From IMG/VR virus record IMGVR_UViG_3300028840_001395, positions 248,001-312,000 of that record: a stretch of 64,000 bases of DNA; one strand, written 5' to 3'. Made by a program: the position numbers and the translations under genes. Shown here piece by piece: positions 772-58,765 of the stretch; the first letter of the stretch is position 1; each line of letters begins with the position of its first letter. The notes under the pieces were generated by a model that made no database searches, had not been told where the DNA came from, and saw nothing but the letters and a program-made list of their open reading frames with translations.

Positions 772-788
772 CCCTCCCTGGCTCTATT

Positions 789-1429: not shown

Positions 1430-1442
1430 CGTGACCTCCCGG

Positions 1443-2216
1443 CTAGCTCGCGTTGGCCTTGCGGAAGCGGTCGTAGCACTCGGACTCGGTGACCTCGCGG
1501 CCCAGCTCCTTGAACAGCGCCCGGAGCGCCCGGTTGTAGGCGGTGGACCGGCGCTGGACCTCGGAGCGGCTGCACTCGCCGTCGCAGGTCAGGTTCTCGG
1601 GCGACAGGTTCCCGTACACCCGGTCGATGTCATCGAGGATGTCATCCTCGTCGCGCTTGCCGGTGAGCGGGGTCACGTCGCTGCGCTTGGGGGTCCGGGT
1701 CTCGCCCGTGGTGAGCAGGAGCCGGACGCGCCCGTCGCCCAGGAAGCCCTCGACCGTGCCGGTCTCGGTGCCGTTGAAGGGGTTGGTGTAGGTCACCCGG
1801 TCGCCCACCTTGAAGTCGTGGTTCGCGCCGCCGTCCGCGTCGGGCAGGTTCGGAACCACCTGGGAGACCATCATCTTGTAGCGGCCCCCGCGAGCCCCCT
1901 CCACCAGGATGGGGTACTTGCGGTTGCGGGGCTTGAGCCCCGTGATGGTGAACTCGCGCCCCTCGCACTGGAACTTCGCGCCGAAGTGCTCGGGCTTGAG
2001 GCCGAAGCGTCCGCAGTGCTTCTCGAAGTCGGCCCGCTGGTTGTCCTTCGGCACCGTCAGGGCGACCTTGGTGTGGGTCGCCGTGTCGGAGAACTTGAAC
2101 CGCTCGGGCGTGTACTCCAGCCCGAACCGCTCGGCCACCTCGCGCATCGCCTTGCGGATGGCCTCGTTGACCTCGCCCACGTTTCTCCGGTCGAACTTGG
2201 TGATCTTGGTCGTCAT
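1443..2216 (-). CDS. Hypothetical early protein (probable SH3-like modules)
   Basis: 257-aa ORF with AGGAGG RBS and class I promoter; segments FTITGLKPRNRKYPI and FKVGDRVTY. Confidence 0.65.
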   Translation of the reverse strand: MTTKITKFDRRNVGEVNEAIRKAMREVAERFGLEYTPERFKFSDTATHTKVALTVPKDNQRADFEKHCGRFGLKPEHFGAKFQCEGREFTITGLKPRNRKYPILVEGARGGRYKMMVSQVVPNLPDADGGANHDFKVGDRVTYTNPFNGTETGTVEGFLGDGRVRLLLTTGETRTPKRSDVTPLTGKRDEDDILDDIDRVYGNLSPENLTCDGECSRSEVQRRSTAYNRALRALFKELGREVTESECYDRFRKANAS

Positions 2217-2234
2217 CGCGTGTTCCTCCTGTCC

Positions 2235-2263
2235 AGACTACTCTGTGGTCGAGTCGAGTAAGA
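2235..2263 (-). promoter_or_regulatory. Class I promoter TCTTAC-N17-TAGTCT
   Basis: Copy of a 7-fold repeated motif directly upstream of the RBS and ATG at 2216. Confidence 0.75.
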
Positions 2264-2275
2264 CCCCGCCTCCGG

Positions 2276-3067
2276 TCAGGCGCAGCGCTTGATGGTGTCG
2301 AGCAGGTCGTCGGTGGCGACGAAGCCCTGCTTGACCGCCTCGGCAGCCGCCGTGCCACCGGCCCGCAGGATGAAGTCCGTGCCCGGCTCCAGCCTGTAGG
2401 ACACGTAGCGCCGCACCGGCAGCTTGCTGCGGAGCAGGCCCTTGGCGACCGTCTTGGCCTTCGACTTGGCCTTCGGCACCGGGCCGTTCGGGGCCGGGGT
2501 GATGACCGTCTCGTGGATCTTCAGCCCCTGGAGGTAGATGGTGCCCGGCAGCGGGGCCTTGGCCTCGCCGGGGTTGCACTCGCGGCACTGGCAGTTGGCC
2601 TTGCCGCTGCACTTGTAGACCCGCGCTCCCCGGACGGGCTCGCCGTCGAGGGTCAGGCCGTCGAACACGTCCTGGGTGGTGGAGGTGGACTCGGCGTTGG
2701 GGTCGAGCGTCCGCTCGAAGCTGGCGACCAGCTCGTCCCGCGCCGCCGTGAAGTCGGCCAGCGTCAGGGCGTTGCCCTTGCCGTCCACGATGCCCTTGGC
2801 GGTCGCGTCGGCCAGGGCGGCGTCGAGGTCGGCGTCCCGCACCTGCTCCAAGGAGCGGCGCACCAGGTTCTCGTAGCGGAAGCCGGTCAGGATGACGACG
2901 TGAACCTCGTCGTCACCGTAGGTCTTCCGGGCCGCGCCCCGCCCGCGCTCCGTGCCGCGCTTGCGGGTGATGAGGCCGGTGAAGGTGCCCTTGCGGGCGT
3001 CCTTGAGCAGCAGGCCGAGCAGGTCGGAGTTGCTGTTGCTGCGGGCCGTGCGAGTCGTCGTTGCCAT
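2276..3067 (-). CDS. Hypothetical early protein
   Basis: 263-aa ORF, AAGGAG RBS, CxxxxxCxCxxC cluster, class I promoter upstream. Confidence 0.7.
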   Translation of the reverse strand: MATTTRTARSNSNSDLLGLLLKDARKGTFTGLITRKRGTERGRGAARKTYGDDEVHVVILTGFRYENLVRRSLEQVRDADLDAALADATAKGIVDGKGNALTLADFTAARDELVASFERTLDPNAESTSTTQDVFDGLTLDGEPVRGARVYKCSGKANCQCRECNPGEAKAPLPGTIYLQGLKIHETVITPAPNGPVPKAKSKAKTVAKGLLRSKLPVRRYVSYRLEPGTDFILRAGGTAAAEAVKQGFVATDDLLDTIKRCA

Positions 3068-3092
3068 CTTCGTTCTCCTTTCGTCCTCACCT

Positions 3093-3121
3093 AGACTACT
3101 CTGGCCCAGACCGAAATAAGA
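3093..3121 (-). promoter_or_regulatory. Class I promoter TCTTAT-N17-TAGTCT
   Basis: gtcttatttcggtctgggccagagtagtctag on the minus strand. Confidence 0.8.
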
Positions 3122-3178
3122 CCGTCCTAAGACGGTTTTTTCTTTCTAAGGAACGCGCGTCCCGCGTAGAGAAAAGGG

Positions 3179-3207
3179 TCTTATCTCGGCCCACCACAGA
3201 GTAGTCT
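3179..3207 (+). promoter_or_regulatory. Class I promoter TCTTAT-N17-TAGTCT driving the structured RNA
   Basis: tcttat ctcggcccaccacagag tagtct; divergent partner of 3093..3121. Confidence 0.8.
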
Positions 3208-3212
3208 AGGTG

Positions 3213-3902
3213 AACGGGGAGCGAAGCATAGAGGCAAGCTCCCAAGCTCTGTGAGAAGTCAAGACTATGGGCGGCTTGGAGGGCTCGGTAGGCGGCTCCG
3301 AAAGGGGTAACCTCCGCCGGTTGCAACCTGGACGGGGTACCGAGTCGAGGGTTCAATTCCACTCCCGCTCACACACGAAGAAGTCGGTGCCCCGAGGGGG
3401 TGCCGATAGGATAGACTGCCAGAGGCTTCAACCAAGGAGGGTTCAGCCGATGGGCTAGAGTCAGCCCTACGATGTCCCTGAACTGGTCCTGGGGCATCGT
3501 GGAAAGACGCTCACCACCCTTGAGGAGAGCGTCCTGGGCAACGAGGTTCAGGGGCCTCCCGGAACCCCCCGAGGCCAGCTTGCAATGGGCGAGCTGGGGC
3601 TGGTACTCGGGCCGGGGGGATGGTATAGACCAGGCAAGGTTGACAGCTCCGGCCCCAACCCTCGGCGGAGGGATTCGAGCACGGACGACGCTAGGCCCGC
3701 TCTGCGTGGATGTCGCGTGACAGTCGGCTCGATACCCGGTGATGTGCGAGGCCCAAGTCGAGTGAACGGTGCCGAGACTAGCGGCACCCTCACTTGCACC
3801 CCCGAAGCGGACTGGAGTAGAGTGACCCCATGATCTTCGCACTCATCGGAGCCGACTTCCAACGGACGTTCGCGCGGGTTACGCCCGCGCCCGTTGGAGG
3901 TC
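3213..3902 (+). ncRNA. Candidate large structured ncRNA or long structured leader (~690 nt), family unassigned
   Basis: Own promoter; no credible ORF; more than 10 helices found by eye (3217-22/3238-43, 3268-74/3365-71, 3283-90/3338-45, 3383-3407, 3469-78/3491-3500, 3506-12/3527-33, 3575-83/3589-97, 3722-30/3849-57, 3768-74/3782-88, 3854-65/3891-3902); T-loop GGTTCAATTCC. Confidence 0.65.
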
Positions 3903-3905
3903 AAC

Positions 3906-4253
3906 ATGGCACGAGGAATCGCGTTTCGTAGGCACCACACCCATCGGGTCTGCCACAACCGCCGAACCCTTCACCTGGCCCTCATGTCGGATCTGACTGA
4001 GGCTGACATCGGACGGTGGGGTTACCCCACCTGGTACGACAAACGGTGTCTCTTCGGGTGCAACTGCTCGGCCAAGACTCCGGGCCGTCCCCGCCGGGGT
4101 CATGGGGTTTGTCGCACGGGTCAGCGGGATCGCATCTACAACTGGCGTCGTGAGGCCGTCCGCATCGGTCATCTGTCTCGGTTCTACTCGGGTGTGGACT
4201 GGGACTCGGATGAGGTGGTGCTGGCTACTTCGGGGACTGACTACAGCTACTGA
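3906..4253 (+). CDS. Small basic Cys/His-rich protein
   Basis: GGAGG RBS, then MARGIAFRRHH...CLFGCNC...GHGVC. Confidence 0.6.
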   Translation: MARGIAFRRHHTHRVCHNRRTLHLALMSDLTEADIGRWGYPTWYDKRCLFGCNCSAKTPGRPRRGHGVCRTGQRDRIYNWRREAVRIGHLSRFYSGVDWDSDEVVLATSGTDYSY

Positions 4254-47090: not shown

Positions 47091-47408
47091 TCACGGGTCT
47101 TGGTGATACCGGGGCTTGGCGCACTTCTTCTCTAGCTCCTCGCACTTCTCGATGGTCACGACACAGGAGGGGGCCAGGGCGAAGCCGTCCTTCTGCGTCT
47201 GGATGCAGAACTCCTCGCAGGTCGTCCCGTCCATCAAGGGCATCCCCTCCGGGCAGCCCAGCGCCCGAAGGTGGTCACAGGCAGCCCCGCACTGGTCAGT
47301 GTCATCCGGCTCGATGACGATGGGCGGAGGCTTGACCTGGCAGTGACTCCCCAAGAGGAGAGGCGACATCACCAGCAGGGCCAGCAGAATCTTGAATGCG
47401 CGCATCAC
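47091..47408 (-). CDS. Cys-rich predicted lipoprotein
   Basis: Signal peptide LLLGSHC; 8 further Cys. Confidence 0.6.
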   Translation of the reverse strand: MMRAFKILLALLVMSPLLLGSHCQVKPPPIVIEPDDTDQCGAACDHLRALGCPEGMPLMDGTTCEEFCIQTQKDGFALAPSCVVTIEKCEELEKKCAKPRYHQDP

Positions 47409-48244
47409 TCGGCTCCCTTGCTTCGCACGAACGGCTCCCAGCCGCCGACCATCACCCAGAAGTCGTGAACGTGGTCGTCACTGGCGATGTAGTCGGGGTC
47501 CATGAAGTAGAAGCCGTCATGGCCCCAGGACGACCCCCAGGAGTTCTCCCCGATGAACTGCCCGTCCTTCCAGCCCAGAATCACGGTGGCGTGCCAGCCC
47601 GTGATGTCCTTGGGGGGCCGGAGCGGCTCCTCGTGGCCCTTGATGAAGCCCCGGTAGGTGTTCCAGTTGCGGCCCACCGCTGCGCCGAACACCACCGGGC
47701 ACCCTGCAGCCAGAGCGAGGATGACGCTCTCCACCCGGTCGGCCCCGCGCGCCCGGATGGTATAGAAGGAGTCGATCTTGTGGACGAACGCCTTCCGCAT
47801 CGCCATCCACGATGGGGGCGTGTACACCTTGGCCAGGTCGAAGGGCCAGTCCTCCTCGGTGCAGACCCCGTAGCGCCGAAGGACATCACACGCCAGTCGG
47901 ATGAAGGTGCCGCCGTCGTCGTTGGTCTGGGGCGGGAACATCAGGTTGCGGGCCAGGTAGTAGACCGCCAGGCGCGACAGATCCACATGGGCGTTCGGGC
48001 CGTGCTTGAGAATGCGCTGGATCTCCAACGCCTTGACCGTAGCTTGGGCGACACAGGAGGACGAGTGCCGCTGGTTGTGCCGGGGCGACGTGAACGGTCG
48101 GAGGTCGATGTCCACATCCGTCACGATGCTCGCAGCCTTCATCTTGGGCCGGAGCTTGTCCTCGAAACCCCAGAAATCAGGGGAGTCTTCTTCGGGCAAG
48201 AAGCCGCTGCCACTGATCGGATAGTCGTTGTCAGCCATCTTCAT
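47405..48244 (-). CDS. Papain-like cysteine peptidase (C1)
   Basis: NQRHSSSCVAQA (Q/C), GWHATVILG (H), ENSWGSSWG.DG (N). Confidence 0.88.
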   Translation of the reverse strand: MKMADNDYPISGSGFLPEEDSPDFWGFEDKLRPKMKAASIVTDVDIDLRPFTSPRHNQRHSSSCVAQATVKALEIQRILKHGPNAHVDLSRLAVYYLARNLMFPPQTNDDGGTFIRLACDVLRRYGVCTEEDWPFDLAKVYTPPSWMAMRKAFVHKIDSFYTIRARGADRVESVILALAAGCPVVFGAAVGRNWNTYRGFIKGHEEPLRPPKDITGWHATVILGWKDGQFIGENSWGSSWGHDGFYFMDPDYIASDDHVHDFWVMVGGWEPFVRSKGAE

Positions 48245-48280: not shown

Positions 48281-48859
48281 TCAAGGCATGGGGGCCTCGG
48301 GATACTCGAAGGTCACGAAACACAGGGCAACGAAGCAGGTGCCGAAGTCCTCGTCCACGACCATCTCACGGACGGAGGTCTTGAAGCTCGGCTCCAGGCG
48401 ATACTCGGGCTGGTGTCCGTAGCGGCGCTCGAAGATGCCCCGAAGGTCGGCTTCGAGAATCTTGCTGGCCTTCTCAATGGAAGCGTGACCCTCGTACTCG
48501 GCAGCAAAGCCGCCGATGGTCTTCCAGGAGCCGTCCCCCTGCTTCTTCTTGACCCAGCAGCGGCCTACCCCGGCGCAGAGGTGGTCGCCCTGGACGCCAT
48601 CGATCTGGGCCTTGATCGTCTCCAGCACAGCCCCATGATGGAACAGGGCTTCGCGCTTGGCCTCCTCGATGCTGATCTCTTCCGACTCGGGCGGCAGGAC
48701 GCTGGTGTACATCATCACGTTGAAGTTCTCGATGCCCGCGTCGAGCAGCGCGATGTCGTAGCACGAAGTCTCGTAGTGGTCAGAACCAGTGTCCGCCGAG
48801 GACTGGCCCACACCCGAGGTCACGAAGTACTTGCAAGGAATCCGACAACCTGTAGCCAT
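48281..48859 (-). CDS. pdaD: Pyruvoyl-dependent arginine decarboxylase
   Basis: P..YF.TSG.G.S...YD.ALL.AGIENFN...YT/SVLPP self-cleavage site; FAAEY; FVALCF. Confidence 0.85.
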   Translation of the reverse strand: MATGCRIPCKYFVTSGVGQSSADTGSDHYETSCYDIALLDAGIENFNVMMYTSVLPPESEEISIEEAKREALFHHGAVLETIKAQIDGVQGDHLCAGVGRCWVKKKQGDGSWKTIGGFAAEYEGHASIEKASKILEADLRGIFERRYGHQPEYRLEPSFKTSVREMVVDEDFGTCFVALCFVTFEYPEAPMP

Positions 48860-48903: not shown

Positions 48904-50909
48904 TCAGATTTCTGGTTTCCGACCCACCACGAAAGGCTCCCACGCGGGCTTCAGGGCCGTTCCATAGCCCTCGTAGCGTTGAGCCTCCTCGCTGACAGGC
49001 ACCTCGCCGTCCTTCTCATGAAAGCCCTTCTCTTCAGCCTCTCTCATCCAGGGACGATCCCCCCCTTCTATGCCATGCCCACTGTTGATGCTCTTGGGGT
49101 TGCGAACATCCTTCGCCGGAATACGAATCTTTTCCCGCACAGCTCCGGCCTTCTTGTCCAAAGCCTTGGAGATGTTCAAGGACTTCGGGAATCCCGAGTT
49201 TCCCGTGATGAAAATCTGATCCTTGCGTCGGGCCAGGAAGGCTCCCGTGGGAACACGGACACACCAGACAGGCCCCTCGTAGTGCTCTGTCACAGCGGCC
49301 TTGAGATGTCGGGCCTGAAGCTGGGTCATCGGGTTCATGTGCAGCCCAACAACGGCCTTCCTGAAGTTGATGCGACCCTGCCGATTCATCAGGTGCGCCA
49401 ACGTCTGGAACCACACGAGGTCTTCAGGATCCTTCTGATAGAATGCCCACCGACCCCGATCACAAGCTCCGTCACCTTTGAGAACGGCATCCACGAAAGC
49501 GTGCTTCTCTTCACGGGTCATCTGCCACAAGAGGTGCCAGGAAGGACGCTTCCCAGGGAGCATCTCTCGGACGTGAAGTGCCATAGGCCCCGTGAAGAAC
49601 CAGGTGTGCTCGATGTAGTCCCTGTCCTTGTAGGTACGCTCCCGCTCGTAGTGTCGATACTCGGGAATAAGCTCCTCGACCAAGGAGTAGATTTCCTGAA
49701 CGTGCTCCATGTTCACAGACGACTGGTAGATGCGAACGCCCGTGCCGTTCTGGTCGAATCCACCCTCTGTCCAGACCCAGCCCAAGAGTGCCGCCAGCTT
49801 GGTGCCTCCGATGCCAGAGCCGTCATGAACTCCAGCGAGAGGAAGTCTCAGGTTGTTCCAGCGGTCGATCTGACCAGCTTCCTCGACGTTCCACTCCGGC
49901 TCATCCCACGCCTGCCGGACACCATCGATCATCTTCCGAATGCGGTGCTTCTTGTACACCCGATGGTTGGGGGTGAGAAGCTGGTCGGTGTTGTCATTCC
50001 TGAAACAGATGAGGTCACCCTCGAAAGGAGCCTGGATGACTTCCTCGACCGGCTCCAGACGGATATCATCCGTCTTGCTGTCCCAGCAGGCGACCTTCTC
50101 GCCCACCTGGACTTCCAACCCCGACTTCCATCCTGTCTCGGTCAGGATCTCGGAATCGTCGGGGAGACAGCCGTACATCCAGGCTTCAAGGTCGAGGTCA
50201 ACGAATCCGACCTGCTCCATTGCCGCAGCCATCCGGTGGAACGTCCGGGTCGCCCCGAACACCTTGATGACACCTCCCGGTTTGAGAACGCGGAACACCT
50301 CCTCCAGCCACTGCCGATGCCACTCCTGCATCGCCCTCGTCTGCTCCAGGCGCGTGTTGGGGAAGGAGGGATTGTCACAGCGACACCGCTTGAAGCCCTT
50401 ACGGTCGTTGCCCCGCTTGCTGCCCCCACAGTTCTCGCAGATGGGATTCTGATCGCCTGTAAAGGACGGGAGGGGGCTGTCACTGAATCGCTCCGACCCA
50501 CCCGTCGTGAAGGACGCCCCGCCTGTGGCGACCTTCTTCCCTCGACGTTTGCCGACCGGCTTCCAGTGGTCATGAGGCTGCTCGCAGGTACACTTCTTGG
50601 CCCCCCGCAGACGGCCACCGCACTCGGCACAGGTGGGGTTCATCCCACCGTGCGGCAAGCTGCCCCCATGCGAAGGCCACGGGATGTTCCGGTCACCGAT
50701 GCCCACCTTGGACATCCCCGCCCCGGTCGCCCAGAGTCGATCCCAGTCCTTGCCCATGAATTCAAGTCCGTGGTATGCTAACCGTAGGGCGGGTCACAGA
50801 CGACTGCCCCGATGGACTCTTCATCCATCACCTGGAGAAGCTCGAAGCTGTCTCCAAGTCGGAGGGTGATCGTCTGGCCTGCCCTACGGCAGCCAGTCTC
50901 CTTTGTCAT
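48904..50909 (-). CDS. Catalytic (DPPY) subunit of a split beta-class DNA methyltransferase; interrupted by a 14-nt coding gap and an intein
   Basis: uORF 50909..50778 MTKE...GDS...VVCDPPYG*; second frame GLEFMGKDWD...RVLKPGG..FGATRTFHR..YG|SGFPKS...GTALKPAWEPFVVGRKPEI*; no motif I. Confidence 0.75.
49198..50169 (-). mobile_element. Intein with LAGLIDADG endonuclease in the MTase subunit (324 aa)
   Basis: YG|CLPDDSEILTETGWK ... TPNHRV ... LLGWVWTEGG, AVLKGDG ... FITGN|S. Confidence 0.9.
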
Positions 50910-50921
50910 GTGAGTTACTCC

Positions 50922-52025
50922 TTACCACAAGTCCAGCACATCGACTTCTGGCTCGGGCTCGGGGATGACGAGATCATCCAAGGGACTCTCCAATCTCCTC
51001 ATGATGACGCAGTTATTCTCCATCGTGGTGGTCTTCTCGCCATCCTTCATCGCCCTGGAAATCTTCGACACCAACTCATCCTCGAAGGAGTTGGTGACCA
51101 TTCGCTCGACATGCAAGATACCTTGGGCGGCCTCTACGACCATATCACTGAGCTTCTTGTCACGTTGAACAGGGCCAACCTCGAAGATGATGCGGCCTGT
51201 GGGTTTCACCACGCGGGCTAGCTCCGTCAGACAGTCCTTCAAGAACTGCAGGTATTTCTTGGCATCCCGGATGAACGTGCTGGGCTCCTCGGCCTTCAAG
51301 AACCACAAGCGCAGCCAGTTCTGGTCCGCGTAGTCTATCACGTCGAGAAATGGCGGCGATGTCACCACCATGTCCACAGAGTCATCGGGGAGGGGCAGTC
51401 TACGGGCATCCCCCTCCTGGATTTTTCCATCGCCCTTATGTCCCTCAACCGGAATGAACTTCACGGCTGCCTGCCGCAGGATGTATTTCACGTTACGGAA
51501 CTCGGGCTCCGTCTTGTGCTTGGCCATCGCGGTCAGCAGACTTTTCGCCCGTACCGAGAACACGTTGTAAGTTTCGGTGGAGAAAAATCCCGCAGAATGT
51601 CCATGTAGACGCCCCATCGCCAGAGCCGTCAAGGTCGGAGAACGATCCGCCTCCCGTAGATGATAGACCTGGGGCCAGGTATCAGGATGGTAAAAGGGCT
51701 CGACCTCCGGAGGAGGGGGTGGAGCCTCCCCCTCCAGGTTCAGAGCCTCTATCTCTTCCATGACCTTGGGTTGGGTGTCACAGTTGAGCTTGACGCGGGA
51801 CAGGGCGAGCGCCACAGGGTTCACGTCCGTCCCGTAGAAGGTCTTCCCCCGTATAGTCGCCTCCAGTGCAACCGTTCCCCGGCCCACGAAGGGGTCGAGT
51901 ACGGTCTGAGCCTCGGGCACTAAGTCGAGGAAAAATCCAGGAAGTTGAGGAGGGAAGCACCCCTGATAGGAGCACACTTGGTGGAGTTTGTGCCCTCGTT
52001 TCGGCTTGGTAGGCCAGAGAGTCAT
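50922..52025 (-). CDS. Alpha-arrangement amino-DNA methyltransferase
   Basis: YQGCFPP, VLDPFVGRGT (motif I) preceding VVTSPPF (motif IV), RVVKPTG. Confidence 0.85.
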   Translation of the reverse strand: MTLWPTKPKRGHKLHQVCSYQGCFPPQLPGFFLDLVPEAQTVLDPFVGRGTVALEATIRGKTFYGTDVNPVALALSRVKLNCDTQPKVMEEIEALNLEGEAPPPPPEVEPFYHPDTWPQVYHLREADRSPTLTALAMGRLHGHSAGFFSTETYNVFSVRAKSLLTAMAKHKTEPEFRNVKYILRQAAVKFIPVEGHKGDGKIQEGDARRLPLPDDSVDMVVTSPPFLDVIDYADQNWLRLWFLKAEEPSTFIRDAKKYLQFLKDCLTELARVVKPTGRIIFEVGPVQRDKKLSDMVVEAAQGILHVERMVTNSFEDELVSKISRAMKDGEKTTTMENNCVIMRRLESPLDDLVIPEPEPEVDVLDLW

Positions 52026-52884: not shown

Positions 52885-54327
52885 TCAATCATCATCCCCC
52901 CAGCCGAACATCGAGTCGAGAGACTCCATCTCGGGCTTCTCCACCGTCCGGTCCGAGACGATCTCCGGGCTGTCGCCCACGATGCCACCTCGGGCCTCGC
53001 GCTCCCAGTGCCGGACCCTGGAATCTGCGATCTCCAGATACTCCTCCTCGCGCTCGATGCCGATGAAGTCGTGGCCAGTGAACACGCACGCCAGGGCCGT
53101 CGTCCCGCTGCCCATGAACGGGTCGAGCACTGGCCCCTCGTTGGTCGGGACATCTTCCAAGAGCCGCCGCATCAGGCCGAGAGCTTTCACGGTCGGATGG
53201 AAGTTCTTGACGCGCTCCGCTGTCCGCCCGGCCCCCGCCGCAGGGCATTCCAGTCCATCTGAGCCCTCTTGCCGGTCAAAGCACGCCTCGGCCCCCGTCT
53301 TCCCGGCCAGGTGGTCACAGCCCGCTTCGCGCTCGCTGCGGGCTGCCTTGGCGACATAGTGGAAGCCGTCCGGCTCATCTACCCACAGGATGGAGTCTCG
53401 GATCTCGAAACCGGCGTCCTCGATCATGCAGGCTCCGGTGTGGCCTGTGGGCTCGTCATCGGGAGCGACGAGCATCAGGTGTCCGCCGGGCCGGAGGACA
53501 CGGAGGAACTCCTCGATCTGCTTCTCGGTCGGCTCGCCTTTGACCAGCAGCCCCGTGACGGACTCCTTGGCCCACTCGCCCGTATCGTAGTCGGTGCTGT
53601 CCAGGTCGAGGAACATCGCTCTGGGAGCAGGCTCTGGTGGGGAGATCATCGTCAGCAGGTAGTCGATCATCTCCTGTGGCATCTTACTCATCTCTGCTCC
53701 TTGGACTTGCCGGTAGAACCGGCTCGCGCCGCCCTCATCATCATACCCGACCATCCCACCATGCCGGGTCGTGATGCTCCCCCAGCCGTCGTATCCCTTG
53801 AAGTTGCTCTTGATGTGATGAGGCTTGCAGCCTTCGCGAGGCCCACTCTGATCATCCAGCACGACAATGAGGCACTCGGGATGACACTCCCAGGCGGGGA
53901 CTTCTTCGAGGCCGTTCTCGTCCGAGTATCCTCGACGGGTCGCCTCGGTTGGACGGAATCGCCATTGGCTCTTATCCGCCCGTCCGGCATCCCCTTCGGG
54001 TCGGGTGTCTACCCGGATGCCCTTGACCTTCTTCGTCCCGACCTGACGACACTCGGGCCGGTGTTGCAGAATCACATTCGGGGGCCAGCGGCCCTTCGAC
54101 CCACACCGCTCCTGGACTTCCTCGGCACTCATCGCGTGGATGCGGAAGGTGCTCTCCCCCTGGTAGCCCTTGGTGCCGTCAGCCCCCGACTTGTACCAGC
54201 CGGGGATGTCATCGGGGTCACGGCCAACCCGGCTGGCATCGATGTTCAGCCCCCCAGCTTCGTGGCGCAGCACGTTGTCTGCGACCGACCCGATCAAGGG
54301 CTTGCGGGCCAGGGCGATGGTCCTCAC
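52885..54327 (-). CDS. MTase cassette 4 fused to a SAM-binding subunit lacking the catalytic DPPY
   Basis: N-part LARKPL...GRWPPNV...GGASRFY; internal AAGGAG plus ATG at 53691; C-part RVLRPGG, IEDAGFEIRD, HPTVK, VLDPFMGSGTT, FIGIE; motif IV reads LVKGEP. Confidence 0.8.
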   Translation of the reverse strand: MRTIALARKPLIGSVADNVLRHEAGGLNIDASRVGRDPDDIPGWYKSGADGTKGYQGESTFRIHAMSAEEVQERCGSKGRWPPNVILQHRPECRQVGTKKVKGIRVDTRPEGDAGRADKSQWRFRPTEATRRGYSDENGLEEVPAWECHPECLIVVLDDQSGPREGCKPHHIKSNFKGYDGWGSITTRHGGMVGYDDEGGASRFYRQVQGAEMSKMPQEMIDYLLTMISPPEPAPRAMFLDLDSTDYDTGEWAKESVTGLLVKGEPTEKQIEEFLRVLRPGGHLMLVAPDDEPTGHTGACMIEDAGFEIRDSILWVDEPDGFHYVAKAARSEREAGCDHLAGKTGAEACFDRQEGSDGLECPAAGAGRTAERVKNFHPTVKALGLMRRLLEDVPTNEGPVLDPFMGSGTTALACVFTGHDFIGIEREEEYLEIADSRVRHWEREARGGIVGDSPEIVSDRTVEKPEMESLDSMFGWGDDD

Positions 54328-54842
54328 GACTCGTCCTGCGTCTGCTTGTAGAAGCGAGATGTGTCGTCCTGGTCATCCAGCGCAGCTACGGGACAACACT
54401 CATCGCACTCCCATGCTTCGACCACCTCAAGTCCATCTGCGTCGGCGTAGTCAGTGCCCTCCCGCTCGACACCGCCCCCATAGGCCCCCGTCCCTCCCAG
54501 GCTGGTCTTGCTGTGATGATGGTTCACGCTGGTCGGGACCCGCTTCTCACCGACGCACACGCACTCGGGACGGTGGTGCAGAATCACGTTCGTCGGCCAG
54601 CGCCCACCTTCATGTTGCTGGCTCCGGTAGTCGTCGCCCTCTGGAGAGGCGTTGAACACCCGGCGCTCTGTGTGCAGGCCGGGGTTGGTCTGACACGTCT
54701 GGTTGCTCGACCCCCACACCCCTGCGCCCTTGGCACCACGGACTCGGCTGGCATCGATGTTCAGTCCGCCCGTCGAATGTCGAAGGACGTTCTCCGCGAC
54801 AGAACCGACGAGGGGCTTCCGGGCCAGGGTAATGACCCTCAT
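54324..54842 (-). CDS. Stand-alone MTase variable cassette 3
   Basis: MRVITLARKPL..SVAENVL...GGLNIDASRV...GRWPTNV.LHH.PEC...WEC..C.CPV..LDDQ...SRFYKQ. Confidence 0.8.
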   Translation of the reverse strand: MRVITLARKPLVGSVAENVLRHSTGGLNIDASRVRGAKGAGVWGSSNQTCQTNPGLHTERRVFNASPEGDDYRSQQHEGGRWPTNVILHHRPECVCVGEKRVPTSVNHHHSKTSLGGTGAYGGGVEREGTDYADADGLEVVEAWECDECCPVAALDDQDDTSRFYKQTQDES

Positions 54843-55363
54843 GATCTCTTGACCTGCTTGAAGAAGCGGGAGGCTCCTCCTTCATCAGCAAACCCTCGGA
54901 CGCTCGTATCCCTGACCTCATTTGGATTCCAGGTCATCGAGACACCGGATGTTGGATAGATCGCTCGTCCTGTAGGTTGCCGGACAGTCCCTTTGATCTC
55001 CCCACTCTGGTCATCCAGGGCATCAACGGGGCATCCATCCTCGCACTCCCAGTCGGGAACCTCCTCAAGCTCCGAGTCGCCCAGTTGCGTGACCTTCTTC
55101 GTCCCGACGACCTGGCACGCGGGCTTGTGCTCCAAGATGACGTTCGCCGGGAAGCGACCCACTCGCTGCTCGTTGATTCTGTCGATGGGATAGAAGGAGT
55201 TCTTCGGGCCGTAGTATCGCTCCCCACCACCCTTGATCAGCACGTCCTTGACTCCGATGCGGCAGGCCCCGATGTTCAGCCCACCCGTGCCGTAATTCAA
55301 CACATTCTCGGCTACGCTCCCCCCCTTGGGGAGAGGCTTGCGGGCCAGGGTGATCACTCTCAT
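54839..55363 (-). CDS. Stand-alone MTase variable cassette 2
   Basis: MRVITLARKPL...GRFPANV...WECEDGCPV..LDDQSG...GGASRFFKQV. Confidence 0.8.
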   Translation of the reverse strand: MRVITLARKPLPKGGSVAENVLNYGTGGLNIGACRIGVKDVLIKGGGERYYGPKNSFYPIDRINEQRVGRFPANVILEHKPACQVVGTKKVTQLGDSELEEVPDWECEDGCPVDALDDQSGEIKGTVRQPTGRAIYPTSGVSMTWNPNEVRDTSVRGFADEGGASRFFKQVKRS

Positions 55364-55847
55364 TCCTTGACCTGCTTGAAGAAGACAGAGGTGACATCCC
55401 CGCTCTGGTCGTCCAGAGCCAGGACGGGACAATCCGGATGGCACTCCCAGGCTTCGACTTCCTCCTCTACTTGATCGATGATTTCCGTCTTGGGAGGCTC
55501 ACCGCCATAGTCAATCTTGACAACCTTCTCGGTTAACTTGACGGTCTTGGTTCCGACACAGATACAGTCAGGATGGTGTTCCAATAGAGCATTCGGAGGC
55601 CAACGCCCCATGACACTCTCGGGCCAACCAGGAGGGGGTCTCCGTGGGAGGTTTCCCCACTTTGGCACTTTCCTTTGTCTCCATGTCCTCGACACGTCTC
55701 GGGCCAGTAGGAGCACTGAGTACCCCCACCTTTTTTCCCTACCCGGCAACCATCGATATTCAAGGCCCCCACGTCTCTCTTGAGCACGTTATCGGTGATC
55801 GAGGAATCCTTCGGGAGAGGCTTCCTAGCCAGGGTGATTACTCTCAC
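55360..55847 (-). pseudogene. MTase variable cassette 1, frameshifted near 55636
   Basis: First half (LARKPL...LNIDGCRV) in ORF 55533..55847; second half (GRWPPN...WECHPDCPV...FFKQV) in ORF 55360..55749. Confidence 0.7.
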
Positions 55848-58765
55848 CTCGCTTCCAGTTCCTTCATGTCATCTTCGTCCAGGGCATCGCCCACGGATTC
55901 CTTCTGCTCCGTGGTCATCGGCACCTCGTAGCACGTCAGGATGCGCCGACAAGGCCACTCTACCCGTGAGAGGAACATCTCAAAGGGCTTCTGGTCACGC
56001 GATTTCAGGCACTGGAACTGAACACGGTTCTGGTCACGGAGGTCATCATCGACCCAGGAGGAAGTCACAATGTCAGCCGAGTTGTGCGACAACAACGGCC
56101 CCGTCTGATACTCGTGATCCCCCTCCACCTCCAAGTCCATGACCGGAGCATCAATCCCGGTGTCCCGAACCGACTCAACCTGCATTACCTGAAGCTCCAA
56201 GAGCTTTTCCAGGAACCGCGTATCCTCGTTGTCGATGCCATCCTCGGTGGCTGCCTGGAGAAGCGTCTCAATAGCCCCGCGAGGCACAAGACCCGTCCGC
56301 TTGACCTTCCGGGGGTTGTTGTAGAACGCCCGCTTGAAGCGCGTCTGCGGACTCCCAGGGGGGTGGATGAGCTTGTAGACCCGCAGGAACGTCTCGGGAA
56401 CCGGGTAGACCTGCTTGTCACAGGGGGTCTGCTTGAGCGAGTCCCACACCAGACCCATCTTGGCATCTTCAGTGAAACCGATCTTCTCCAAGAATCTCCG
56501 ACGACCCTCACGGGAGACCACCCGCAACGTGTAACCGCCGTAGGTCTTCCCGGTCTTCTTCAAGGAGGTCTCGTTGTAAGACAGGTGGGAGTCGATACCA
56601 AGACCCGTCAGGAGCATCTGAATCTGACGGAGGAAGGACTCACTCGCCTCCTTCATCTTGAGGCCAATGATGTTGTTCTTGTTGACCCACCCGTCCGTGT
56701 CGAAAAGACCCCGCAGGTAGGCGCATACCGTGCTCTCTGTCCCTTGCAGGATGCACTCCGGGACATCTCCTGCCCGCTGACCAGCGACCTGCTCGAACCA
56801 TCGCTTCAAGGGCTTCGACCACTTCACCAGATCGAAAGACCCAGGGCGAGAGGGGCTTTCCAGGAGAGGAAGCTCGTGACCGAACGTGGCCTGGAAGGCG
56901 TACCGGATGGCTTCCCGAACCTGCATCTCCAGCCGGTTCCCAGTCCACGCGAGACCGCCCGAATGAACCTTCCCATCACCATCCCACGCGCCGAGGAGGT
57001 AGGCTAAGGTGGGGGTGGTGGAGAATGGGGCGTCCAGTTCACCCTCCCCCTTCCGACCCACCAGGGTCTCATACCTCCCAGCTTCAAGATCCGGGAGCCG
57101 GGTATCCTCTTGCGCCCATCGAGAGCCCCCCTGGGACGATGCAAGATAATCCTCAGAGGTCAAATCCCGAACAGCCTTCCATCCCAACAACCCGTCCTGA
57201 ACCACCCGGACGCGATGGGGGGCAGTAGCCTCCAGGATGGAACCCCGACTGGTCTTGACCTCCCAGATACGCCGAACGCCGTTATCGAACTTGTTCAGCA
57301 CCTTCTTCCACCCACCGGAAGACCACACCGAATCCCCGATACTTATGTCCCCGATGTTAATGTAACCCCTCAAAGAAGTGACGTAAGTGCTTGAAATCCT
57401 TACACAACGCTCTGCCTCGTTAGCGTAGCTCAAATGGGTCAGGTCGTAGCTCGCCGTGCCGGTCTTCTCCTTGCGCTTGGTCGCGGCCTTGTAGCCCTCA
57501 CGGTTGATCTGGAACAAGGCGATGACGGCCATGCCCATTCCCCGCTGGAAGCTCATCGCCAGGCGCTTGCAGTCACGGATGATCTCATTGAGGCGTTCCG
57601 TCGTGCTCGACACCCACTTGCGAGGGGCCATCAGCCCAACGTGGTCGATGTAGATGGACGAGAACGGAGACTTCGAGTAGACCAACTCGGCCCGGTGCCG
57701 GAGGTCAGCCATCGTGAAGTCGGCCTTGTCCGGGTCAGCGACCTCGATGTGGATCTTGCCGAAGTTCCGGGGGTCGGGCCACGGGGTGTTGTTCTCGGAG
57801 TCGAGGGTGTGAACCATCTGCTTGCCCATGAAGTCTGGCTTTACGAAATCCGCCAGGAACTTCTTGGCGTTCGGATGGAACTCATCCAGCGTGCCGTCTC
57901 GGACGTTCGTGTAGGGCAAGCCCACGCTGTCGTTGGGGTGCTTCTGCAAGCCCAGCTTGTAGCGGATCTCCTTGAACTTGGGATGCTGGCTGTGCATGGC
58001 GAACAAGATGCGACGGCATTGCTGGTAGGGCATCTCCAGGGAGAAGATCAGGCTGCTGTGGTTGTAGAGGATGGCCTGGTTGTAGGCCCAGTTGAGCATG
58101 AACGTGGACTTCAACCCACCCGTGAACCCCGCGTGTATCCACAGCTCGTTCCGCTTGGCTCCGTTGAGGGCGGAGTCCATCTGGGTCAGGCCCGTGTGCT
58201 GGCCAATGCCCGCCAGGGGATCAGCCTCGACCCGCTCATACTCCGCCATGAAATCCTCGCCGTCCTGGGTGACTTCGCCCGAGAGGCGACCACCAAGCGT
58301 CGGGGCCACGATGTCGTGGCTCTCATCGAGGATGTGGTGAATGGCGGCATACGGCCCCTGAATGACCTTCTCTTCCTTGCCGTCCGTGACCTTGATGCCC
58401 TTGCCCAGGATGTCCGCTGCCTTCTTGAGAAGCTCGCTCACGGCCCGGACGCGGCGCTCCTCGGCTTTGGCTTCGAGGCGGGTCTTGAAGTTGCCGTCGA
58501 TCAGGACGGGAAGAACCTCAAGGGCCTTGACCCGGTTGACGACCGTTTCTTCCTTCTTGATGGTGAAGTGGGTGACTATGGCGTTGATCTCGGGCACATG
58601 GTTGTGCGTCTGGACGAACTCCTGGATGAACGTCCAGATGATCACGTCGTCGGGAACATCGAACTCCAGCCGGGACTCATGCAGAATCCTGAAGTTCCGC
58701 AGGAGGTGGGTGGCGTCGTCGTCCTTGGCGTTGACGATGAACGTGGAACGCAGGAGGGACTTCAC
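55844..58765 (-). CDS. dnaB: DnaB-like replicative helicase with intein
   Basis: TGLTQMD, Walker A GFTGGLKST, FSLEM, IYIDHVGLM, QINR, LKSRD. Confidence 0.9.
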   Translation of the reverse strand: MKSLLRSTFIVNAKDDDATHLLRNFRILHESRLEFDVPDDVIIWTFIQEFVQTHNHVPEINAIVTHFTIKKEETVVNRVKALEVLPVLIDGNFKTRLEAKAEERRVRAVSELLKKAADILGKGIKVTDGKEEKVIQGPYAAIHHILDESHDIVAPTLGGRLSGEVTQDGEDFMAEYERVEADPLAGIGQHTGLTQMDSALNGAKRNELWIHAGFTGGLKSTFMLNWAYNQAILYNHSSLIFSLEMPYQQCRRILFAMHSQHPKFKEIRYKLGLQKHPNDSVGLPYTNVRDGTLDEFHPNAKKFLADFVKPDFMGKQMVHTLDSENNTPWPDPRNFGKIHIEVADPDKADFTMADLRHRAELVYSKSPFSSIYIDHVGLMAPRKWVSSTTERLNEIIRDCKRLAMSFQRGMGMAVIALFQINREGYKAATKRKEKTGTASYDLTHLSYANEAERCVRISSTYVTSLRGYINIGDISIGDSVWSSGGWKKVLNKFDNGVRRIWEVKTSRGSILEATAPHRVRVVQDGLLGWKAVRDLTSEDYLASSQGGSRWAQEDTRLPDLEAGRYETLVGRKGEGELDAPFSTTPTLAYLLGAWDGDGKVHSGGLAWTGNRLEMQVREAIRYAFQATFGHELPLLESPSRPGSFDLVKWSKPLKRWFEQVAGQRAGDVPECILQGTESTVCAYLRGLFDTDGWVNKNNIIGLKMKEASESFLRQIQMLLTGLGIDSHLSYNETSLKKTGKTYGGYTLRVVSREGRRRFLEKIGFTEDAKMGLVWDSLKQTPCDKQVYPVPETFLRVYKLIHPPGSPQTRFKRAFYNNPRKVKRTGLVPRGAIETLLQAATEDGIDNEDTRFLEKLLELQVMQVESVRDTGIDAPVMDLEVEGDHEYQTGPLLSHNSADIVTSSWVDDDLRDQNRVQFQCLKSRDQKPFEMFLSRVEWPCRRILTCYEVPMTTEQKESVGDALDEDDMKELEAR
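56081..57406 (-). mobile_element. Intein with LAGLIDADG endonuclease in DnaB (442 aa)
   Basis: AER|CVRIS ... ATAPHRV ... YLLGAWDGDG, YLRGLFDTDG ... LLSHN|SAD. Confidence 0.92.

What the first reader, a model, noticed from the sequence alone, without database searches (positions are those of the whole stretch)
50767..50783. Candidate programmed ribosomal bypass (hop) right after the catalytic DPPY
Seen (mRNA sense): GAC CCG CCC UAC GGU UAG CAUACCAC GGA CUU GAA UUC AUG GGC AAG GAC UGG GAU. A 43-codon ORF with a good RBS ends DPPYG-stop. Skipping 14 nt from Gly GGU to Gly GGA gives DPPYGLEFMGKDWD, the family consensus. GGU-UAGCAU-ACC forms a mini hairpin containing the take-off codon and the stop. 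Known: T4 gene 60 hops from GGA-UAG in a hairpin to a downstream GGA. Alternatives: a -1 shift giving DPPYGLAYHGLEF, excision of a 14-nt micro-intron, reinitiation at MGKDWD, or an inactivating insertion with an ACGG duplication. The take-off and landing codons are synonymous, not identical.
Basis: partly seen in the sequence, partly recalled or inferred. Interest (0 to 1): 0.85.

Follow-up and report, generated by a model that had tools for sequence, protein, structure and literature searches.

The report
Ribosome hop site in phage methylase
A giant phage's DNA methylase gene is interrupted, right after its catalytic DPPY-Gly motif, by a stop codon and a few non-coding bases. The same kind of interruption is kept under selection in dozens of unrelated uncultured phages, so ribosomes most likely hop over it, which would make it only the second natural family of such hops in phages.

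Summary
On the minus strand, a 43-codon ORF (50909..50778) with an AAGGAG ribosome-binding site ends DPPYG-TAG. Eleven bases later a GGA codon opens the frame that reads LEFMGKDWD. Removing 14 nt restores DPPYGLEFMGKDWD, exactly as in the uninterrupted gene of mycobacteriophage ShiLan.

It is not an artefact: the same ORF sits on 12 independently assembled contigs.

It is not a one-off. About 38 distinct metagenomic loci carry an interruption at this exact spot.
- A stop codon follows the Gly codon in every locus, though the search did not ask for one.
- The gap is 2-21 nt and falls in all three frames.
- The gap has almost no G (3 of 218 bases).
- It is followed by GGN in all but two loci, then a Leu/Ile codon that uses all six Leu codons.
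- Exactly three sense codons then precede the family's conserved Met.
- Both flanking ORFs are under purifying selection.

Only a Gly-to-Gly ribosomal hop explains all loci.

No conserved RNA hairpin exists.

In 13 lineages, though not in this window, a Vsr-like homing endonuclease gene lies beside the mini-ORF. The mini-ORF plus gap behaves as a mobile cassette, as in T4 gene 60.

I found no publication describing this. No product has been shown experimentally.

The parts
50918..50923 (-). Shine-Dalgarno AAGGAG of the mini-ORF, 8 nt before its ATG; overlaps the TAA of the upstream 367-aa methylase gene.
   Evidence: Read from the sequence.
50778..50909 (-). Mini-ORF of 43 codons plus TAG. It encodes the N-terminal strand, helix and motif IV of the methyltransferase and ends DPPYG. 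It carries the Arg-rich stretch CRRAGQTITLRLGD 24-37 residues before the take-off codon.
   Evidence: PHROG methyltransferase profiles match it. The identical ORF is on 12 contigs.
50784..50795 (-). Codons for the catalytic motif IV, DPPY.
   Evidence: invariant in alignments A1 and A2.
50781..50783 (-). Proposed take-off codon GGU (Gly). It would sit in the P site when the stop codon enters the A site.
   Evidence: A Gly codon directly followed by a stop codon is seen in every related interrupted locus.
50770..50780 (-). Non-coding gap of 11 nt, UAGCAUACCAC. It begins with the UAG stop, has no G other than the one in UAG, and contains the recurrent UAYC motif.
   Evidence: Across loci the gaps hold G at 3 of 218 bases against 33% in the flanks, and no gap contains GG.
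50767..50769 (-). Proposed landing codon GGA (Gly). Decoding would resume at CUU, 50766..50764.
   Evidence: GGN occupies this position in 36 of about 38 loci.
48904..50766 (-). Resumed reading frame: LEF, then the 617-aa ORF that starts MGKDWD at 50757. It holds two Cys-rich CxxC...CxC stretches that look like zinc ribbons, the N6_N4 methylase core, an intein, and a C-terminus ending ALKPAWEPFVVGRKPEI.
49198..50169 (-). Intein of 324 aa (Cys1 ... Asn, followed by Ser) inserted between YG and SGFPKS of the same methylase. It is a separate interruption, removed at the protein level.
   Evidence: Intein-free relatives read YGSGFPKS.

Best explanation
**What it is.** This is a programmed translational bypass, a short 'stop-hop'.

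**How it would work.**
1. Ribosomes translate the 43-codon mini-ORF.
2. Peptidyl-tRNA-Gly is on GGU in the P site and UAG is in the A site.
3. A fraction of ribosomes does not terminate. The tRNA leaves its codon and the mRNA slides 14 nt.
4. The anticodon re-pairs with the next GG-containing codon (GGA), and decoding resumes at CUU.
5. The result is one polypeptide reading ...VVCDPPYG-LEFMGKDWD..., with the catalytic motif IV and what follows it restored exactly.

Ribosomes that do terminate release a 43-aa peptide, so the site also throttles methylase output.

**Signals.** They appear minimal:
- a Gly codon directly followed by a stop;
- a short spacer free of G, and so free of any competing landing site;
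- the first downstream GGN.

The Arg-rich mini-ORF peptide may add a nascent-chain effect.

**Origin (inferred).** The insert belongs to a cassette made of the mini-ORF plus the gap, which in many relatives travels with a divergently transcribed Vsr-like homing endonuclease. The insert probably destroys that enzyme's target in the highly conserved DPPYGLEFMGK-coding DNA. The hop keeps the methylase alive. The window's phage keeps the hop site but has no endonuclease gene.

**Shown and inferred.**
- Shown: the sequence architecture, its conservation, the selection on the flanks, the mosaicism and the linkage to the endonuclease.
- Inferred: the hop itself, its efficiency, and the immunity role.
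For: 1. **Exact restoration.** Removing 14 nt gives the sequence found contiguous in ShiLan gp65. More than 120 uninterrupted IMG/VR loci read the same way.

2. **Not an artefact.** The identical mini-ORF is on 12 contigs, 9 of them 0.2-1 Mb long. L038 and L009 have the identical junction.

3. **Stop codon not asked for.** A search that required only an insert between PPYG and G-x-EFMG returned 4 viral and 29 metagenomic loci, 26 of them distinct. Every one has a stop codon directly after the Gly codon. The single chance hit in 185,579 genomes has none.

4. **Gap properties across 34 tabulated loci.**
   - Stop codons: TGA 18, TAG 14, TAA 2.
   - Gap length is 5-21 nt, with frame classes 18, 11 and 5, so no single frameshift or readthrough fits.
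   - In L025 the +1 frame is blocked by TAA.
   - In L003 two in-frame stops would have to be read through.
   - Outside the stop, the gaps hold A83, C74, T58 and G3, and none contains GG.

5. **The codons after the landing Gly are translated.**
   - The Leu/Ile codon counts are CTG10, CTT8, TTA5, TTG5, CTC2, CTA1, ATT2 and ATC1.
   - Always exactly three codons lie between the landing codon and ATG, while the gap itself varies.
   - Loci retrieved through the mini-ORF peptide alone, and so unbiased downstream, read GLEF, GIEF, GIAF and GLKF.

6. **No start codon.** Neither the window nor the other TAG-class loci have a canonical start codon in the landing frame.

7. **Purifying selection on both ORFs.** L006 against L013 gives dS 0.447 and dN 0.000 downstream, and dS 0.176 and dN 0.038 in the mini-ORF.

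8. **Widespread.** 865 short ORFs match the mini-ORF profile. Of the top 120 cluster representatives, 89 end exactly in DPPYG.

9. **Landing-codon mutations are tolerated.** L044 has TGT and is seen on 16 contigs. L172 has AGC. A hop predicts this tolerance because the landing codon is not decoded. Both keep positions 2 and 3 able to pair with tRNA-Gly(GCC).

10. **Parallel with T4 gene 60.**
    - A homologous Vsr-like homing endonuclease starts 134-141 nt upstream of the take-off codon in 13 distinct interrupted loci. None of the uninterrupted loci fetched (more than 120) has a clear homologue. The only hit there is one weak match, L131 at 25% identity.
    - Near-identical genomes differ by presence or absence of the endonuclease.
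    - Mini-ORFs are more alike than the downstream parts, with lower dS.
Against: - No protein, RNA or ribosome data exist, and no cultured host or phage carries the site.
- Take-off GGU and landing GGA are not identical. tRNA-Gly(GCC) would land with a G:A wobble mismatch.
- About a third of the loci share such a mismatch, and two loci lack GGN altogether.
- No conserved stem-loop exists, unlike T4 gene 60. From general knowledge, unprogrammed stop-hops in E. coli are inefficient, at roughly the percent level.
- In the class with gap length 2 mod 3 and GGT-TGA or GGC-TGA, a TTG or CTG overlapping the stop is in the landing frame. L033 has an in-frame ATG in a TAATG. Coupled reinitiation could therefore serve some relatives, though not the window.
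- Most loci came from a pattern that fixed GG, GAR, TTY and ATGGG, so conservation at those positions is partly imposed. Only about 10 loci are unbiased downstream.
Confidence: 0.7

Rival explanations
1. This is a two-piece enzyme with no hop. Ribosomes terminate at UAG. The same or new ribosomes then start at the AUG of MGKDWD, 20 nt downstream. The 43-aa DPPYG fragment and the large fragment assemble non-covalently, as other homing-endonuclease-fractured phage genes do.
For: - The family's conserved Met gives a ready AUG 14-30 nt after the stop in every locus.
- Gene callers annotate two ORFs.
- Phage genes fractured by homing endonucleases are known, and their halves are joined at the protein level or work as two subunits (PMC2677866, read; 10.1101/2022.08.31.505936, read).
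- Some relatives have TTG, CTG or ATG in the landing frame overlapping the stop.
Against: - The three codons before the AUG are kept as Leu/Ile-x-Phe through synonymous changes, always at exactly 9 nt, whereas the gap next to them varies freely.
- No SD precedes the AUG in the window.
- A stop directly after Gly and a G-free spacer are not required by this model.
- The split would fall inside the catalytic loop, and the fragment starting at Met would lack GLEF.
Confidence: 0.12
2. The 14 nt are removed, or absent, at the nucleic-acid level. Either the mRNA is cut and rejoined (a micro-intron), or a subpopulation of genomes deletes the insert between the ACGG/GG direct repeats. Only such molecules would encode the enzyme.
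For: - Short direct repeats flank the gap: ACGG in the window and GG in all loci.
- Uninterrupted relatives sit inside the main interrupted clade, so precise loss does occur over evolutionary time.
Against: - No known bacterial or phage RNA-splicing system removes 2-21 nt.
- No conserved structure exists.
- All 12 assemblies of this phage carry the insert.
- Neither version predicts an obligatory stop codon directly after Gly or the depletion of G.
Confidence: 0.05
3. A -1 ribosomal frameshift near the stop gives DPPYG-LAYH-GLEFMGK, because the -1 frame is open across the window's gap.
For: The landing frame is open from 8 codons upstream. The class with gap length 2 mod 3 is the commonest, at 18 of 34 loci.
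Against: - There is no slippery heptamer. tRNA-Gly on GGU cannot re-pair at CGG.
- A shift upstream of Gly would destroy DPPY.
- Sixteen of 34 relatives have gaps in the other two frames, with stops in the way.
- The product would carry four extra residues in the catalytic loop that no uninterrupted relative has.
Confidence: 0.04
4. This is a dead gene: an inactivating 14-nt insertion scar, perhaps from endonuclease cutting and sloppy repair, with no product spanning it.
For: The ACGG duplication looks like a repair or duplication scar. The phage encodes other methylases next door.
Against: - The downstream frame is a 621-codon open frame that still carries an intein with intact Cys1 and Asn-Ser splice-junction residues.
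- In relatives, both flanks have dN far below dS.
- The interruption persists across deep divergence, always with an immediate stop and a downstream GGN.
Confidence: 0.04

Closest known systems
Phage T4 gene 60 bypass cassette (topoisomerase subunit; mobA element)
   Same: - A Gly take-off codon is directly followed by a stop.
- Decoding resumes after a downstream Gly codon.
- The gap interrupts an essential conserved region.
- The cassette travels with a free-standing homing endonuclease that is present, decayed or lost in different relatives, while the bypass site stays. The source is 10.1101/2022.08.31.505936 (read).
- The upstream ORF part is carried with the cassette.
   Different: - The gap is 2-21 nt (11 here) against 50 nt, or 20 nt in one gene 60 clade.
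- There is no conserved take-off stem-loop.
- Take-off and landing codons are often only synonymous.
- The host gene is a DNA methyltransferase and the hop sits at its catalytic motif.
- The endonuclease is Vsr-like and divergently transcribed upstream, not placed between two gene halves.
- The cassettes share neither gap length nor host gene. I did not align them to T4 gene 60.
- It has not been tested experimentally.
Short 'stop-hops' / tRNA hopping seen in E. coli constructs (9 nt specifying one amino acid; +5/+6 hops), as reviewed in PMC5009743
   Same: - Peptidyl-tRNA re-pairs at a nearby similar codon across a slow-to-decode stop codon.
- It is independent of frame and needs no elaborate RNA structure.
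- Relatives L173 (GGA TGA GGT) and L174 (GGT TA GGT) have exactly these geometries.
   Different: Those were synthetic or incidental low-level events. The review states that no natural in-frame stop-hop is known. Here the arrangement is conserved under selection in a gene family.
Mitochondrial 'byps' of Magnusiomyces capitatus
   Same: Many short inserts are skipped by translation. Take-off and landing codons are often imperfectly matched, with two-out-of-three pairing (PMC5009743).
   Different: - According to the review, byps have an unused codon, not a stop codon, in the A site, and their bypassing seems independent of mRNA context.
- From my own knowledge, not checked here, byps are 27-55 nt long, GC-rich and scattered through many genes.
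- Here there is one fixed site, a G-free spacer and bacterial-type ribosomes.
[quoted passage not shown]
   Same: A phage gene with a short coding gap, inferred from sequence only (PMC5009743).
   Different: It has a different gene, a different take-off codon (UUA) and a proposed SD signal, with only a few examples. Here there are dozens of diverged examples with comparative support.
Genes fractured by Vsr-like free-standing homing endonucleases (Dassa et al. 2009, PMC2677866)
   Same: The endonuclease fold family is the same. Top fold matches are Vsr 1cw0 and I-Bth0305I 3r3p, and the PHROG annotation is 'homing endonuclease'. The setting is also the same: phage DNA-metabolism genes in metagenomes.
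   Different: In fractured genes the endonuclease sits between two halves that are rejoined by split inteins or left as two proteins. Here it sits upstream, and the break is a few nucleotides with no intein at that site.

Membership tests
Programmed translational bypassing (as defined by T4 gene 60) | Take-off sense codon immediately followed by a stop codon | tested here: met
   GGU UAG in the window. A stop follows the Gly codon in all of the roughly 38 related loci, though the search did not require it.
Programmed translational bypassing (as defined by T4 gene 60) | Downstream landing codon that the same peptidyl-tRNA can pair with | tested here: inconclusive
   The window goes GGU to GGA: two of three positions pair, with a wobble mismatch for tRNA-Gly(GCC). 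Across loci, take-off and landing codons are identical in 10 of 34, about two thirds are compatible with the same tRNA, and two exceptions carry TGT and AGC.
Programmed translational bypassing (as defined by T4 gene 60) | Skipping the gap restores the conserved protein sequence of uninterrupted homologues | tested here: met
   DPPYG|LEFMGKDWD matches ShiLan gp65 and more than 120 uninterrupted loci.
Programmed translational bypassing (as defined by T4 gene 60) | Take-off stem-loop and other conserved mRNA structures | tested here: not met
   Single-sequence folds are no better than shuffles. The consensus structure of 29 sequences has an energy of -0.49 kcal/mol, with no helix at the gap.
Programmed translational bypassing (as defined by T4 gene 60) | Stimulatory nascent peptide | not testable with these tools
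   There is a candidate only. K/R residues at -38..-23 average 2.8 in interrupted genes against 1.1 in uninterrupted ones. That retrieval was biased, and some interrupted genes lack the motif.
Programmed translational bypassing (as defined by T4 gene 60) | A single polypeptide spanning the gap is made | not testable with these tools
   This needs mass spectrometry or reporter assays.
T4 gene 60 cassette (homology) | Homologous 50-nt cassette within a topoisomerase II subunit gene, next to mobA | tested here: not met
   The host gene is an N6_N4 methylase, the gap is 11 nt, and the linked endonuclease in relatives is Vsr-like. I made no direct alignment to T4.
Homing-endonuclease-linked mobile cassette | Endonuclease gene adjacent, polymorphic among near-identical genomes, with mosaic flanks | tested here: met
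   This is met in relatives: 13 lineages carry it, and L036 against L014 shows presence and absence with a 54-nt flanking repeat. Mosaicism is shown. It is not met in the window itself, which has no endonuclease homologue.
N6_N4 DNA methyltransferase, PF01555 (beta-type order, motif IV first) | Motif IV DPPY and a match to the family profile | tested here: met
   DPPY lies in the mini-ORF. PF01555 matches the 617-aa ORF at E 6.5e-7, 30 bits against a cut-off of 26.7. PHROG methyltransferase profiles match both pieces.
N6_N4 DNA methyltransferase, PF01555 (beta-type order, motif IV first) | AdoMet-binding motif I (FxGxG) in the same polypeptide | tested here: not met
   The ORF ends at ...GRKPEI with no GSGTT-type motif. 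That motif is in a separate ORF, 54327..52885. Many relatives end at the same point, so this appears to be normal for the subfamily.

The most novel reading that the evidence does not exclude
A self-contained, horizontally moving 'mini-ORF + stop-hop' cassette is mobilised by a Vsr-like homing endonuclease. It makes bacterial ribosomes hop 5-24 nt from Gly to Gly at the catalytic DPPY-G of phage DNA methyltransferases.

This would be the second natural family of programmed bypassing in phages. It would also be the first natural stop-hops, working with minimal signals: Gly-stop, a G-free spacer and the next GGN, possibly helped by an Arg-rich nascent peptide. It would imply that short hops are a general way for genes to survive endonuclease-immunity inserts.
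Probability: 0.6. Interest if true: 0.92.

Novelty: new variant of a known kind. Interest (0 to 1): 0.88.

Why it matters
Efficient programmed bypassing in bacteria and phages has rested for over 30 years on one case, T4 gene 60 and its homologues. The 2016 recoding review says counterparts with shorter gaps "have long been presumed" and that no natural in-frame stop-hop is known (PMC5009743).

This family would supply dozens of natural variants with gaps of 2-21 nt, in all frames, with all three stop codons and with matched and mismatched landing codons. That amounts to a ready-made mutational series for asking what the minimal take-off and landing requirements are.

It would repeat, independently, the link between homing endonucleases and bypass inserts. 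That supports the idea that hops evolve as a way to make endonuclease-immunity insertions harmless.

In practice, gene callers split these methylases into a 43-aa 'hypothetical' ORF and an N-terminally truncated methylase. At least 89 protein clusters, and possibly several hundred, are therefore probably misannotated.

Tried and rejected
- **Assembly error.** Rejected: the identical junction is on 12 contigs.
- **Repeated or mobile micro-element within the window.** There is no second copy of the gap.
Not supported.
- **Stop-codon reassignment or a phage suppressor tRNA.** The window has no tRNA genes, long ORFs read normally under the standard code, and the window's gap is out of frame.
- **Cultured examples.** There is no near DNA match in 50,697 phage records. 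The genome scan gave only one unrelated chance hit. No cultured phage carries the linked endonuclease beside a methylase.
- **Single origin of the interruption.** Rejected on a short-alignment tree, where at least 5 changes are forced by supported branches. Resolution is weak, with only 130 columns.
- **Direct repeats around the endonuclease in other lineages.** Found only in the L036 lineage.
- **Arg-rich N-terminus as a strict correlate of the interruption.** There are exceptions both ways. Interrupted L018, L031 and P0086 lack it, and uninterrupted L087 and P0142 have it.
- **Literature.** Five of 10 searches found no description of a hop at DPPYG or in any methyltransferase.
Full report
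**1. The observation**

The gene lies on the minus strand. A 43-codon ORF (50909..50778) follows an AAGGAG Shine-Dalgarno (50923..50918). It ends GAC CCG CCC TAC GGT TAG, which reads DPPYG-stop.

Eleven bases after the Gly codon comes GGA CTT GAA TTC ATG GGC AAG GAC TGG GAT, in the +2 frame. That frame stays open for 621 codons, to 48904. Removing 14 nt gives DPPYGLEFMGKDWD.

The landing frame is closed by a TGA eight codons upstream of GGA. It has no ATG, GTG or TTG before the Met of MGKDWD, and no SD precedes that ATG.

Pfam places the large ORF in N6_N4_Mtase. PHROG methyltransferase profiles match the small and large ORFs at consecutive profile positions. ShiLan gp65, the best annotated relative, reads ...AVVTDPPYGLEFMGKDWD... 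without interruption.

The proposed GGU/ACC mini-hairpin is only 3 bp, is not part of predicted folds that are no better than shuffles, and is not conserved.

**2. Context and authenticity**

The window is part of a 435.8-kb uncultured phage contig, IMGVR_UViG_3300028840_001395. Neighbouring genes include DnaB with an intein, family A DNA polymerase, primase, an SNF2 helicase and several methylases. No cultured phage is close at the DNA level.

The exact 43-aa ORF is recorded on 12 contigs, nine of them 0.2-1 Mb, from independent samples. The junction in L038 and L009 is base-for-base identical. An assembly artefact is excluded.

**3. The same interruption in many other phages**

A 257-kb phage contig (L003) is about 50% identical in the protein match that retrieved it. 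It has a 43-aa ORF ending DPPYG, then TAG TCA CTC TAA, then GGT ATT GAA TTT ATG. That gap is 12 nt, in frame, with two stops.

I then searched for any insert of 6-36 nt between PPYG codons and G-(NTN)-E-F-M-G codons, without asking for a stop. This gave 4 viral and 29 metagenomic loci, 26 of them distinct. Every one has a stop codon directly after the Gly codon. The same pattern in one genome per species (185,579 species) hit only an unrelated gene, with no stop.

Retrieval through the mini-ORF peptide alone leaves the downstream sequence unconstrained. It added these loci:

| Locus | Junction | Reading after the hop |
|---|---|---|
| L039 | gap 12 | GLEF |
| L040 | gap 8 | GIEF |
| L044 | landing codon TGT | LEF |
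| L046 | gap 8 | GIAFMNK |
| L047-50 | gap 5 | GLEF |
| L171 | gap 11 | GLEF |
| L172 | landing codon AGC | LEF |
| L174 | GGT TA GGT, a 5-nt hop | LEF |
| L176-180 | TAA, gap 9 | GLKF |

A profile of the mini-ORFs finds 865 short ORFs in the 5.8-billion-protein collection. Of the best 120 cluster representatives, 89 end exactly in DPPYG. Uninterrupted genes are far commoner: more than 120 loci in IMG/VR against 4 interrupted.

**4. What is conserved and what is not (34 distinct loci)**

- Stop codons: TGA 18, TAG 14, TAA 2, always adjacent to the Gly codon.
- Gap length including the stop: 5-21 nt, with frame classes 18, 11 and 5.
- Gap composition outside the stop: A83, C74, T58 and G3, against 33% G in the flanks. 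No gap contains GG.
- Take-off and landing codons are both GGN but identical in only 10 of 34 loci.
- The codon after the landing Gly: CTG10, CTT8, TTA5, TTG5, CTC2, CTA1, ATT2 and ATC1. All six Leu codons are used. Phe, Val and Met codons never appear, although the pattern allowed any NTN.
- The landing codon is always exactly three codons before the Met, while the adjacent gap varies in length and sequence (alignment A2).
- Close relatives show strong purifying selection on both sides. L006 against L013 gives dS 0.447 and dN 0.000 downstream, and dS 0.176 and dN 0.038 in the mini-ORF.
- No RNA structure is conserved.

**5. Mechanism**

One mechanism fits every locus. Peptidyl-tRNA-Gly, with a stop codon in the A site, leaves GGN and re-pairs with the next GG-containing codon a few bases downstream. 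Decoding then resumes, giving DPPYG-L/I-x-F-M-G-K.

The alternatives each fail on part of the data:
- **Frameshifting** fails because all three frames occur, and because L025 has TAA in the +1 frame.
- **Readthrough** fails for out-of-frame gaps and would add residues that no uninterrupted relative has.
- **Reinitiation at the Met** does not explain the amino-acid-level conservation and fixed spacing of the three preceding codons.
- **Reinitiation upstream of those codons** lacks a start codon in the window and in the other TAG-class loci.
- **Decay** is excluded by the selection data.

Three features are specific predictions of a hop:
- the G-free spacer, which offers no premature landing site for an NCC anticodon;
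- the obligatory adjacent stop;
- the tolerance of landing-codon mutations that are silent for the protein. L044 carries TGT and is seen on 16 contigs, and L172 carries AGC. Both keep positions 2 and 3 able to pair.

Weak points remain:
- the wobble mismatch in the window (GGU to GGA) and in about a third of loci;
- the absence of a stimulatory structure;
- unknown efficiency;
- some TGA-class relatives have a TTG or CTG overlapping the stop, or in L033 a TAATG ATG, in the landing frame. Coupled reinitiation may contribute there.

**6. Origin: a cassette linked to a homing endonuclease**

In 13 distinct interrupted lineages, a homologous 263-279-aa ORF is transcribed divergently. Its members are 55-62% identical to the L006 copy in the protein alignment. 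Its start lies 134-141 nt upstream of the take-off codon, about 10 nt from the mini-ORF start.

This ORF matches the PHROG 'homing endonuclease' family at E 8e-12. Its model (pLDDT 77) best matches Vsr (1cw0) and the homing endonuclease I-Bth0305I (3r3p). That family of Vsr-like homing endonucleases was described by Dassa et al. (PMC2677866).

None of the more than 120 uninterrupted loci has a clear homologue; the only hit there is one weak match, L131 at 25% identity. The window has no homologue at all.

The gene shows the full range of states:
- intact in most of the 13 lineages;
- disrupted in L022;
- reduced to 36 codons in L015;
- absent from genomes that are otherwise 96-100% identical. 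L036 against L014 differ by an 863-nt segment, which in L036 is flanked by a 54-nt repeat of the mini-ORF start.

Mini-ORFs of interrupted genes resemble each other more than their downstream parts do. The L027 mini-ORF is 81% identical to that of L013, but its body is nearest to an uninterrupted gene. L176-180 share L013's mini-ORF but have a different body. dS is consistently lower in the mini-ORF.

On a short-alignment tree, the interrupted genes fall in at least three places.

All this parallels the mobA-gene 60 element, where the bypass insert protects against the endonuclease and persists after the endonuclease is lost (10.1101/2022.08.31.505936). I infer that the insert disrupts the endonuclease target in the conserved DPPYGLEFMGK-coding DNA, and that only inserts permitting a hop survive. 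This step was not tested.

**7. Comparison with what is known**

The 2016 recoding review states that counterparts of gene 60 with shorter gaps were long presumed. It also says that stop-hops were shown only with constructs, and that no natural in-frame stop-hop is known. Its best short-gap candidates were Streptomyces phage terminases (PMC5009743).

The 2022 survey of gene 60 homologues found them only in the topoisomerase gene. Five literature searches found nothing on methyltransferases or DPPY.

The site works like gene 60 in having Gly-stop, a Gly landing codon and a link to a homing endonuclease. It is not a member of that cassette family. The gene is different, the gap is 11 nt rather than 50, there is no stem-loop, and the endonuclease belongs to a different family.

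**8. Verdict**

- Confidence in a functional Gly-to-Gly hop: about 0.7.
- Rivals: two-piece enzyme with restart at Met, 0.12; nucleic-acid-level removal, 0.05; -1 frameshift, 0.04; dead gene, 0.04.
- Novelty: a new variant of a known kind.
- Interest: 0.88.

Noticed in passing
window 50169..49198 (-): A 324-aa intein (Cys1 ... Asn followed by Ser) sits between YG and SGFPKS of the same methylase. Part of its DNA (about 12% of a 2.2-kb query) is roughly 71% identical to the intein-bearing methylase genes of mycobacteriophages such as Misha28 and ShiLan. Relative L003 has a mini-intein at the same site and L006 has none. The gene is therefore interrupted twice, by two different kinds of element.
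   Followed up: partly
window 55444..52885 (-): Three tandem ORFs each begin MRVITLARKPL..SVAENVL..GGLNI. This is the sequence that follows ...EPxxxxRKP in single-chain relatives. Only the last ORF (54327..52885) carries the AdoMet motif DPFMGSGTT. The hop-containing ORF itself ends at GRKPEI and lacks motif I, so the methylase seems to be built from separate, interchangeable modules.
   Followed up: partly
window 55844..58765 (-): The DnaB-like helicase ORF (973 aa) carries an intein with a LAGLIDADG domain.
   Followed up: no
L044/L045 2594-2691 and L172 about 205-260: Two interrupted genes have a mutated landing codon. L044 has TGT on a 418-kb phage seen on 16 contigs, and L172 has AGC. In L172 a TTG overlapping GGT-TGA is in the landing frame. 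These are either tolerated two-out-of-three landings or a switch to coupled reinitiation.
   Followed up: partly
L173 about 260-300; L175 about 425-470: L173 belongs to a different methylase subfamily (DPPYGTTxCKWD) and reads GGA TGA GGT ACC ACC, a classical 9-nt stop-hop geometry. L175 has the stop one codon earlier (TAT TGA AC GGG CTT GAG). Both are single short contigs.
   Followed up: no
gaps of window 50770..50777, L007, L010, L028, L171 and others: A recurrent UAYC(A) motif lies just before the landing codon in about 21 of 37 gaps. The gap plus landing codon looks like a degenerate tandem copy of the preceding CCN-TAC-GG (in L010, CCATAC occurs twice). Its function, if any, is unknown.
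   Followed up: partly
mini-ORFs, e.g. window 50909..50778; proteins P0003-P0120: The mini-ORFs of interrupted genes usually carry an Arg-rich stretch (RRxGQxxRLxLGD) 22-36 residues before the take-off codon, where uninterrupted genes have an acidic YYxDDxVTLYHGD. It could be a nascent-peptide signal or simply shared cassette ancestry. Exceptions exist in both directions.
   Followed up: partly
L036 521-574 and 1456-1509: A 54-nt direct repeat (RBS plus the first 14 codons of the mini-ORF) flanks the Vsr-like endonuclease gene. L014 is an otherwise identical genome that lacks the 863-nt segment. This suggests a recent insertion or excision event.
   Followed up: yes
L054 (IMGVR_UViG_3300025669_002088) 49-4241: Four uninterrupted DPPYGLEFMG methylase genes lie in tandem within 4.2 kb of one phage contig. 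Three of them fall inside the clade that holds most of the interrupted genes.
   Followed up: no
window 48281..48859 (-) and 47405..48244 (-): A pyruvoyl-dependent arginine decarboxylase homologue and a papain-family cysteine protease lie directly downstream of the methylase.
   Followed up: no
L003 4016-4999; L040 113-1033; L176 1891-2517; L044 4282-4875: Other free-standing endonuclease-like ORFs (HNH_3 fused to a Vsr/MTES_1575 domain, HNH_3, and a weak GIY-YIG match) lie next to interrupted methylase genes that lack the divergent Vsr-like gene.
   Followed up: no
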